Of a stretch of DNA of 64,000 nucleotides, positions 11,118 to 11,204 are shown piece after piece. Positions within the stretch are counted from its first letter, which is position 1. Every line of letters starts with the position of its first letter. The translations under genes were made by a program, and so were the position numbers. Below the pieces are notes generated by a model. That model made no database searches and was not told where the DNA came from. It worked only from the letters and a program-made list of their open reading frames with translations. Where the stretch lies: the IMG/VR virus record IMGVR_UViG_3300008261_000001, positions 186,001 to 250,000 of that record; one strand, 5' to 3'.

Positions 11118-11204
11118 GCTTGAGTGGCGTAAAGTAGTCGCAGTCGGGTGAGGCCTCACCCTGATGCCCTAACGGGCGTGTTGGTTCAAATCCAACCTCA
11201 GGCA
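11118..11204 (+). tRNA. class II (Leu-like) tRNA-like gene with self-paired anticodon region
   Basis: Acceptor GCTTGAG/CTCAGGC, variable arm GCCC-TAAC-GGGC, intact T arm; anticodon arm contains palindrome GGGTGAGGCCTCACCC. Confidence 0.7.

What the first reader, a model, noticed from the sequence alone, without database searches (positions are those of the whole stretch)
11118..11204. Leu-like tRNA whose anticodon is locked in a palindrome
Seen: acceptor, T and long variable arms are intact. The anticodon arm is TCGGG-TGAGGCCTCAC-CCTGA, so the putative T-GAG-G is followed by its complement CCTCA (16-nt palindrome GGGTGAGGCCTCACCC). The D loop also lacks GG. Known: bacterial LeuRS largely ignores the anticodon. 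Inference: it could be charged but not decode, acting as a decoy for anticodon nucleases or tRNA-sensing defences, or as an aminoacyl donor.
Basis: partly seen in the sequence, partly recalled or inferred. Interest (0 to 1): 0.65.

Follow-up and report, generated by a model that had tools for sequence, protein, structure and literature searches.

The report
Phage tRNA-Leu mimic with zipped anticodon
A freshwater jumbo phage carries a gene shaped like a leucine tRNA whose anticodon is base-paired shut by a short insertion, so it almost certainly cannot read codons; the rest of the tRNA shape has been conserved across phage lineages, which suggests a working tRNA look-alike rather than plain debris.

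Summary
Window 11118-11204 (+) is a class-II, Leu-type tRNA body: 7-bp acceptor, A73, 3-bp D stem, long variable arm and a normal T arm. The 16-nt palindrome at 11146-11161 buries U33-G34-A35, and the D loop lacks GG.

It is not an assembly error. At least 14 independent assemblies or runs carry it letter for letter.

Two diverged alleles exist: L020, and a variant reconstructed from contigs. Both have extra bases (5 and 7 nt) just 3' of G37, partly complementary to the anticodon, giving "loops" of 11, 12 and 14 nt.

Across the three alleles every helix of the tRNA body is kept. The closing anticodon stem shows two double compensatory changes. Substitutions avoid the body stems.

Keeping a 7-nt loop open costs 9.0, 8.1 and 4.1 kcal/mol, against 0-3.1 for the phage's 12 normal tRNAs.

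The element and a structured 180-nt spacer form a 269-nt module that is present or absent among close strains and missing from more distant relatives.

Best reading (0.5): a non-decoding tRNA mimic derived from tRNA-Leu(GAG) and still under selection. A decoy role is an untested guess. Main rival (0.3): a recently dead pseudogene. Charging by LeuRS is doubtful for the window allele. No expression data exist.

The parts
11118..11204 (+). Leu-type class-II tRNA-like gene (87 nt, no encoded CCA): acceptor 11118-11124/11197-11203, discriminator A 11204
   Evidence: Identical in at least 14 independent assemblies. Its body matches bacterial tRNA-Leu genes that share the same acceptor.
11127..11141 (+). 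D arm: 3-bp stem GCG/CGC with a 9-nt loop TAAAGTAGT lacking G18G19
   Evidence: The L020 allele has TAATGGTAGC, which contains GG. The reconstructed V2 allele has TAAAAGTAGT.
11146..11161 (+). Perfect 16-nt palindrome forming the RNA hairpin GGGUGA-GGCC-UCACCC. It takes the place of the 17-nt anticodon arm and pairs U33, G34 and A35.
11144..11164 (+). Ancestral anticodon arm in the alternative register: stem TCGGG/CCTGA around an 11-nt 'loop' TGAGGCCTCAC. The former anticodon GAG is at 11150-11152 and G37 at 11153. The extra bases follow G37.
   Evidence: Stem covariation with L020 (CTGGG/TCCAG): all 5 pairs are kept despite 6 changes.
11165..11179 (+). Long variable arm T-GCCC-TAAC-GGGC-GT
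   Evidence: The stem is kept in all alleles. Only the loop varies (TAAC or GTTA).
11180..11196 (+). T arm GTTGG-TTCAAAT-CCAAC
   Evidence: The only change among alleles is A/G at loop position 59.
10938..11117 (+). Structured 180-nt spacer between tRNA-Leu(UAA) and the element. With the element it forms the 269-nt presence/absence module 10939-11207.
   Evidence: The fold is -55.9 kcal/mol, z = -3.0. Every window-vs-L020 substitution in a predicted pair keeps the pairing. The joint 10938->11208 appears in run X2. L153, L165 and L166 lack the module.
10854..10937 (+). Normal tRNA-Leu(UAA), upstream neighbour
11209..11282 (+). Normal tRNA-Met(CAU), starting 4 nt after the element's discriminator base

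Best explanation
The element is a real gene, widespread in the phage population, that descends from a phage tRNA-Leu(GAG).

A short insertion sits immediately 3' of G37. It is complementary to U33-G37 and probably arose by hairpin-templated (quasi-palindrome) copying. It has turned the anticodon loop into a 6-10-bp helix capped by GGCC, so the RNA cannot present an anticodon and does not decode.

The parts that make an RNA look like a tRNA to RNase P, the 3'-end trimming enzymes, the CCA-adding enzyme and other tRNA-binding proteins are kept by purifying selection. These are the acceptor/T minihelix, A73, the D stem and the variable arm.

Most likely the element is co-transcribed with tRNA-Leu(UAA), the structured 180-nt spacer and tRNA-Met, then cut out as a stable tRNA-shaped RNA that serves as an accessory tRNA mimic.

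Inferred, not shown: its job is to occupy a factor that engages tRNA bodies or anticodon arms. Examples are a tRNA-cleaving defence nuclease or sensor, or a tRNA-processing or charging enzyme. Its closed arm would leave it unusable for translation and lacking the open anticodon loop such nucleases act on.

Shown: the structure, the conservation pattern, the population distribution and the presence/absence polymorphism.

Not shown: transcription, processing, charging or any binding partner.
For: 1. It is real and widespread. Identical sequence is found in 4 runs from 4 studies and in 10 further assemblies. The phage occurs in freshwater metagenomes from 14 studies.
2. Three alleles share extra bases just after G37 (window 'loop' 11 nt, reconstructed V2 12 nt, L020/L163 14 nt), beginning CCT in V2 and L020. 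All contain TGAGGCCT.
3. All five helices pair in all three alleles. The closing anticodon stem changes T-A to C-G and C-G to T-A, plus two one-sided changes.
4. In V2 an inserted T pairs with a C-to-A change opposite it, giving 10 contiguous pairs.
5. Substitutions avoid the acceptor, D, V and T stems: 1 compatible change of about 16 events against L020 (P = 0.0014) and 0 of 8 against V2 (P = 0.01). The neighbouring functional tRNA-Met differs from L020 at about 12% of positions.
6. The anticodon is locked. Opening costs 9.0, 8.1 and 4.1 kcal/mol, against 0-3.1 for the 12 normal tRNAs.
7. GGCC is 14- to 19-fold depleted in this genome (48 sites). Three of them lie in tRNA or tRNA-like genes, including this hairpin loop, and the site is kept in all alleles.
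8. Context points to pressure on anticodon loops. A second tRNA in the cluster (Asn type) has an altered loop that is conserved across lineages. The phage also encodes a SpoU-family RNA 2'-O-methyltransferase.
Against: - There is no expression, processing or charging evidence. No RNA run holds the phage.
- The element is dispensable. Strains lack exactly the element (joint 11107->11205) or the whole module (joint 10938->11208; L153-L160, L165, L166).
- It is absent at the syntenic site of the relative with 88% polymerase identity, and from the 375-kb and 227-kb genomes with 64% identity.
- Loop length is unstable (11, 12 and 14 nt), and G18G19 is lost in two of three alleles. Both could be the first steps of decay.
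- Hairpin-templated mutation can produce 'compensatory' changes without selection on the RNA.
- There are only three alleles. One of them (V2) is rebuilt from difference tables, with about 5 substitutions and 1 indel in its contig not listed.
- No partner protein or target is identified.
Confidence: 0.5

Rival explanations
1. It is a recently inactivated tRNA-Leu(GAG) pseudogene. A quasi-palindrome template-switch event destroyed the anticodon loop. The gene is now drifting and being deleted, and the conserved body only reflects short divergence time or hitch-hiking between two functional tRNAs.
For: - Deletion alleles are frequent.
- More distant relatives lack it.
- Loop length is unstable and the D-loop GG is lost in the window and V2 alleles.
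- The window palindrome is entirely Watson-Crick, as DNA-templated copying would give.
- The Rfam tRNA model fails on it.
- The genome uses CTC and CTT for 39% of its Leu codons, so the ancestor made sense as a decoding tRNA.
Against: - Changes are strongly non-uniform: 1 of about 16 and 0 of 8 events fall in the body stems.
- The adjacent working tRNA-Met has diverged by about 12%.
- Two double compensatory changes keep a stem that a dead gene does not need.
- All three diverged alleles carry extra bases just 3' of G37, so the insertion looks older than their split. The body was therefore kept after decoding was lost.
- GGCC is retained in a genome depleted of GGCC.
Confidence: 0.3
2. It is still a decoding tRNA-Leu(GAG). 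The loop would be opened in vivo by modification or a protein, or the 4-7 extra bases after G37 would be removed like a mini-intron. This would restore a loop such as UUGAGGA in the L020 and V2 alleles.
For: - The extra bases sit at the canonical 37/38 intron position and pair with the anticodon, as introns do in eukaryotic and archaeal pre-tRNAs.
- Removing them from L020 and V2 would leave a textbook loop with U33, GAG and G37.
- CTC and CTT are frequent codons in this phage.
Against: - No bulge-helix-bulge motif can form in 11-14 nt.
- The phage genome has no splicing endonuclease, RtcB, Rnl2-type or T4 Rnl1-type ligase. The T4 Rnl1 search was uninformative because its controls did not ring either.
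- The tRNAs are of the bacterial type (tRNA-Tyr has a long variable arm), and bacteria are not known to splice such inserts.
- The window allele lacks one 5' loop base, so no excision gives a proper 7-nt loop.
- Opening costs 9 kcal/mol.
Confidence: 0.07
3. The feature acts as DNA. The palindrome would be a protein-binding, restriction or recombination site that happens to lie in a tRNA relic.
For: - It is a perfect 16-bp palindrome containing AGGCCT/GGCC, in a genome that otherwise avoids GGCC.
- The module is a hotspot of insertion and deletion.
Against: - The palindrome is not conserved as DNA. L020 has TTGAGGCCTTTAAA, and V2's helix contains three G.T pairs that only make sense in RNA.
- 16-nt palindromes occur at the chance rate in this genome.
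- The indel junctions lie at the tRNA borders, not at the palindrome.
Confidence: 0.05

Closest known systems
Bacterial-type class-II tRNA-Leu (Rfam RF00005), specifically the GAG isoacceptor
   Same: It has a 7-bp acceptor, A73, U8, a 3-bp D stem, A15/U48, a long variable arm with a 4-nt loop and a TTCAAAT T loop. The string U-GAG-G matches positions 33-37. Bacterial tRNA-Leu genes with the same acceptor share the scaffold.
   Different: It has no 7-nt anticodon loop: there are 11-14 nt between the stem halves, and they pair with themselves. The window allele lacks G18G19. The Rfam model does not reach its threshold. ARAGORN names the alleles inconsistently, Leu-GAG for the window and Ser-UGA for L020.
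Phage tRNAs that escape tRNA-cleaving defences through anticodon-loop changes (mycobacteriophage tRNAs, PMC10264068; T5 tRNA-Lys against PARIS, PMC11464382; T5 tRNA-Tyr against retron effectors, PMC11555353)
   Same: It is an accessory tRNA-cluster gene in a large lytic-type phage whose distinguishing change lies in the anticodon loop. A neighbouring Asn-type tRNA also has an altered loop.
   Different: The published cases remain decoding tRNAs that replace the cleaved host tRNA. This one cannot decode, so it could only act as a decoy or competitor. That role has not been demonstrated for any phage tRNA as far as my searches show.
tRNA-like RNAs made by the tRNA processing machinery (mascRNA downstream of MALAT1; T4 stable RNAs C and D in the tRNA cluster; the tmRNA tRNA-like domain). 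Named from general knowledge.
   Same: It has a tRNA-shaped body without a working anticodon, it lies inside or next to tRNA transcription units, and it follows a structured upstream RNA whose 3' end it could define through RNase P cleavage.
   Different: There is no sequence relationship. Processing has not been shown here. Its ancestry from a specific isoacceptor is still visible.
Intron-containing pre-tRNAs of archaea and eukaryotes (anticodon-intron helix, insertion between positions 37 and 38)
   Same: The position of the extra bases and their complementarity to the anticodon are the same.
   Different: The extra bases number only 4-7 nt. No bulge-helix-bulge motif can form. No splicing enzymes were found. 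The host is bacterial.

Membership tests
tRNA (RF00005), decoding | Scores above the family threshold against the covariance model | tested here: not met
   There is no hit at gathering score. Only the T arm matches, at 13.3 bits and E = 8. The eight other tRNAs of the window score 53-75 bits.
tRNA (RF00005), decoding | A 5-bp anticodon stem closing an open 7-nt loop with U33 and a purine at 37 | tested here: not met
   There are 11, 12 and 14 nt between the covarying stem halves. U33, G34 and A35 are paired with P > 0.87. Opening costs 9.0 kcal/mol, against 0-3.1 in the 12 normal tRNAs.
Class-II Leu-type tRNA body | 7-bp acceptor, A73, 3-bp D stem, long variable arm and a canonical T arm | tested here: met
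Substrate of bacterial LeuRS (E. coli identity set, PMC9976931) | A73; the A15-U48 pair; G18G19 contacting U55/C56; U54:A58. The anticodon arm is dispensable. | tested here: inconclusive
   A73, A15/T48 and T54/A58 are present. GG is absent from the D loop of the window and V2 alleles and present in L020.
Protein-spliced tRNA intron (bulge-helix-bulge) | Two 3-nt bulges flanking a 4-bp helix, plus a splicing endonuclease and an RNA ligase | tested here: not met
   The insert is too short for the motif. PF01974, PF01139 and PF09414 are absent from the phage genome. The PF09511 search was uninformative.
Neutral pseudogene | Substitutions spread evenly, and pairs break as often as chance predicts | tested here: not met
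   1 of about 16 and 0 of 8 events fall in the 38 body-stem positions (P = 0.0014 and 0.01). No pair is broken in any allele. The sample is small, at three alleles.
Anti-defence tRNA decoy | Binds or blocks a tRNA-directed nuclease or sensor and improves phage yield | not testable with these tools
   The host is unknown, the phage is uncultured, and there are no RNA data.

The most novel reading that the evidence does not exclude
A phage-encoded tRNA-Leu mimic without a usable anticodon, made and matured like a tRNA. It would act as an uncleavable decoy or competitive inhibitor for a host tRNA-targeting immune nuclease or sensor, carried as a mobile 269-nt module together with a structured small RNA. 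This would be the first RNA decoy of tRNA-directed immunity.
Probability: 0.18. Interest if true: 0.85.

Novelty: new variant of a known kind. Interest (0 to 1): 0.5.

Why it matters
Phage tRNAs are now understood partly as countermeasures to host nucleases that cut anticodon loops. Every case described so far is a working, cleavage-resistant replacement tRNA.

A conserved tRNA body whose anticodon is deliberately closed would point to a second strategy: mimicry or titration rather than replacement. It would also give a compact, testable RNA of 87-90 nt with natural presence and absence alleles.

If it proves to be a pseudogene, it is still a clean natural example of hairpin-templated mutation killing a tRNA. 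It is also a warning that ARAGORN-type callers report such relics as Leu(GAG) or Ser(UGA).

Tried and rejected
**Rejected explanations**
- Assembly error. At least 14 independent assemblies are identical.
- Mini-intron. No motif can form and no enzymes were found.
- A coding ORF across the spacer and element (57-70 aa, 10939/10978-11151). Substitutions against L020 show no third-position bias, and a 5-nt indel changes the frame before the stop.
- RNase III site or intrinsic terminator. The helix is too short and no U tract follows it.

**Searches that led nowhere**
- INPHARED phages by megablast gave nothing. By blastn they gave only generic tRNA arms. The tRNA-Ser beside tRNA-Met in phage 121Q is a normal, unrelated tRNA.
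- IMG/VR pattern scans for the 3' half, D arm, hairpin, acceptor frame and spacer returned only the same phage (L004) and two chance hits in coding DNA, L019 and L022.
- The genome-contig scan returned ordinary bacterial tRNA-Leu genes, all with 7-nt loops. It gave no host clue.
- Covariance model R1 on the relatives' whole records found only a normal tRNA-Leu(CAA) paralogue in the 88% relative.
- Literature searches found no described phage tRNA with a self-paired or expanded anticodon loop.
- One protein look-up failed because of a start-codon choice. It was repeated from the ATG.

- Read laying was given 4,001 letters.

Full report
**Source**

The window is bases 186001-250000 of a 290,179-bp IMG/VR virus record that is 93% complete. 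It is a jumbo tailed phage with a family-A DNA polymerase and baseplate proteins. No close cultured relative exists. Public runs place it in freshwater, drinking-water and ballast-water metagenomes from 14 studies. The genome has 13 ARAGORN tRNA calls. The tRNA-Tyr has a long variable arm, so the tRNA set is of the bacterial type.

**The observation**

Positions 11118-11204 give:
- a 7-bp acceptor with A73;
- U8;
- a 3-bp D stem with a 9-nt loop that lacks GG;
- a 15-nt variable arm;
- a standard T arm.

The 16-nt perfect palindrome lies at 11146-11161.

Two refinements are needed. First, the 5-bp stem TCGGG/CCTGA and the palindrome hairpin are alternative registers. The minimum-energy fold uses the palindrome, a 6-bp helix capped by GGCC. 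Second, ARAGORN's Leu(GAG) call needs an 8-bp acceptor, a mismatched anticodon stem and an unstructured variable loop of about 21 nt. The Rfam tRNA model does not recognise the gene.

In the equilibrium ensemble U33, G34 and A35 are unpaired with probabilities 0.001, 0.001 and 0.13. I used the same phage's 12 normal tRNAs as a control. Forcing their 7-nt loops open costs 0 kcal/mol in ten and 2.3 and 3.1 in two. For the element it costs 9.0. "Locked" is therefore a fair word.

A 16-nt palindrome is not improbable on its own: the genome has 6, against 4.3 in shuffles. Its position is what matters.

**Not an artefact**

Contigs from four runs in four studies cover the element with no difference. 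Ten more assemblies from NCBI, JGI, ENA and Logan carry it identically. So does IMG/VR contig L004, which is 100% identical to the window over its whole length and so counts only as another assembly.

**Relatives and alleles**

Relatives found through the DNA polymerase have 88% and 64% amino-acid identity.
- The 88% relative has Arg-Thr-Lys-Leu(UAA) at the syntenic site, with neither the element nor tRNA-Met.
- Elsewhere that relative carries a normal tRNA-Leu(CAA) with a similar acceptor and T arm. It is a paralogue, not an orthologue.
- The 64% relatives have nothing similar.

Closer material was more informative. Contig L020, found again independently as L163, has the same spacer, element and tRNA-Met at about 86% identity. 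A short contig present in two runs gives a third allele. I rebuilt it from the listed differences and call it V2. About five substitutions and one indel in that contig are not listed, so V2 is provisional.

A segment-by-segment comparison shows the following.
- The acceptor, D stem and T stem are identical in all three alleles.
- The variable stem has one compatible change, C-G to U.G.
- The variable loop, T loop and D loop vary.
- The closing anticodon stem reads TCGGG/CCTGA in the window, TCGGG/TCTGA in V2 and CTGGG/TCCAG in L020. All five pairs are kept through two double and two single changes.
- Between the stem halves lie 11, 12 and 14 nt, all containing TGAGGCCT. Relative to a normal loop such as UUGAGGN, each allele has extra bases directly after G37.
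- In V2 and L020 the extra bases pair with U32 and U33. In V2 they also pair with G34 and A35. V2 forms 10 contiguous pairs. L020 forms 7-8 pairs with a 10-nt loop.
- In V2 an inserted T is matched by a C-to-A change on the opposite strand.

Events avoid the 38 body-stem positions: 1 of about 16 against L020 (binomial P = 0.0014) and 0 of 8 against V2 (P = 0.01). Meanwhile the neighbouring, clearly functional tRNA-Met differs at about 12% of its positions.

This is the pattern of a structured RNA under selection, not of uniform decay. The caveats are the small sample, the provisional V2, and the fact that hairpin-templated mutation can mimic compensation.

**Ancestry**

The string U-GAG-G, the Leu-type body and the phage's codon usage all fit descent from a decoding tRNA-Leu(GAG). 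CTC plus CTT make up 39% of Leu codons, and the only other Leu tRNA reads UUR. The L020 allele still has a canonical D loop with GG. The window and V2 alleles have lost it.

**Presence and absence**

- One contig joins 11107 to 11205, removing exactly the element (run X12).
- Another joins 10938 to 11208, so that Leu(UAA) abuts Met (run X2).
- Contigs L153-L160 share an identical downstream 107-aa protein with L020, and L165-L166 an identical 112-aa protein. All of them have Leu(UAA) directly followed by Met.

Element plus spacer therefore behave as a 269-nt accessory module. The spacer folds well (-55.9 kcal/mol, z = -3.0). All its substitutions in predicted pairs are compatible, one of them doubly compensatory. 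It is probably a structured RNA in its own right.

**Other context**

The genome avoids several 4-base palindromes almost completely: GCGC 0, ACGT 0, CCGG 33, GGCC 48 and AATT 87, against hundreds expected. Three of the 48 GGCC sites lie in tRNA or tRNA-like genes, which make up 0.34% of the genome. One of them is the hairpin loop, and it is kept in all alleles. This is a modest sign of constraint on that sequence.

A second tRNA in the cluster, of Asn type at 10660-10736, has the loop GUGUUGU. In another lineage it has an 8-nt loop.

The phage encodes a SpoU-family RNA 2'-O-methyltransferase. It has no CCA-adding enzyme, RtcB, Rnl2-type ligase or splicing endonuclease. The T4 Rnl1 search was uninformative.

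**Interpretation**

The gene cannot work as a decoder. That the body has been kept, apparently since before the three alleles split, argues that the RNA is still made and used as a tRNA-shaped molecule.

Its position inside a same-strand tRNA run, 4 nt upstream of tRNA-Met, means that ordinary RNase P and 3'-end processing would release it.

What it then does is inference. Current work shows that many defence systems cut tRNA anticodon arms and that phage tRNAs counter them (PMC10264068, PMC11464382, PMC11555353, PMC13056530, PMC12445682). A mimic with a closed arm would fit that picture as a decoy or competitor.

Charging is uncertain. E. coli LeuRS ignores the anticodon arm but needs A73, A15-U48, G18G19 and the D/T-loop contacts (PMC9976931). 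The window allele lacks GG.

The main rival is a recently killed pseudogene. Frequent loss, unstable loop length and the degraded D loop support it. The substitution pattern argues against it.

A spliced or remodelled decoding tRNA and a purely DNA-level role are unlikely, for the reasons given under the rival explanations.

**Novelty**

Pseudo-tRNAs and tRNA-like RNAs in phage tRNA clusters are known in general. I found no description of a conserved, self-paired anticodon arm in a phage tRNA-Leu derivative carried on a gain/loss module. I rate it a new variant of a known kind, of moderate interest until expression is shown.

Noticed in passing
window 10660-10736 (+); L153:2231-2305: An Asn-type tRNA has the anticodon loop GUGUUGU (G32, G37, U38), whereas the normal copy at 809-881 has CUGUUAA. 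In the L153 lineage the homologue has an 8-nt loop GUGUUGUA, and ARAGORN calls it tRNA-???(gttg). This is a second conserved, aberrant anticodon loop in the same cluster.
   Followed up: partly
window 10938-11117 (+): The 180-nt spacer between tRNA-Leu(UAA) and the element is a probable structured RNA: -55.9 kcal/mol, z = -3.0. All substitutions against L020 in predicted pairs keep the pairing, one of them doubly compensatory. No Rfam family matches. It is gained and lost together with the element in most alleles.
   Followed up: partly
window 10737-10853 (+); L153:2717-2814; L018 about 1283-1377 (-): An inter-tRNA spacer carries a conserved motif (ATCTGGTGGCA ... ACAGTCAGATGG). It recurs in other lineages and in a different tRNA pair of the 88% relative.
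   Followed up: no
whole genome G000 (window included): Some 4-base palindromes are avoided to an extreme degree: GCGC 0, ACGT 0, CCGG 33, GGCC 48 and AATT 87 in 290 kb, where 470-1400 are expected. Palindromes with 6- and 7-base arms are few (18 and 5 in 290 kb). This suggests heavy restriction pressure from the host.
   Followed up: partly
window 24132-24536 (-); L153:4637-5164: A SpoU-family RNA 2'-O-methyltransferase, closest to TrmH (Gm18) and RlmB but below their cut-offs. In the L153 lineage it sits next to the tRNA cluster together with an AlkB-like 2OG-Fe(II) oxygenase.
   Followed up: partly
L163:1-230: In this independent contig of the L020 allele, only the 3' half of tRNA-Leu(UAA) precedes the module. 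It is joined at the anticodon loop to unrelated sequence. This is either a recombination junction inside the tRNA or a chimeric contig.
   Followed up: no
window 11214/11275 (tRNA-Met acceptor pair 6-67): The window's tRNA-Met has a T.T mismatch in the acceptor stem, where L020 has T.G. Its anticodon stem differs from L020 by compensated changes.
   Followed up: no
L018:900-1110 (-): In the 88% relative, the Leu(CAA)-Arg-Met cluster lies between an ORF that I read by eye as NUDIX-like and an ORF with a C5-cytosine-methyltransferase motif-I-like start (FSGAGIG). Neither was searched.
   Followed up: no
window 33846-35186 (-): An ORF of 446 aa matches phage homing-endonuclease families phrog_3339 and phrog_12131.
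   Followed up: no
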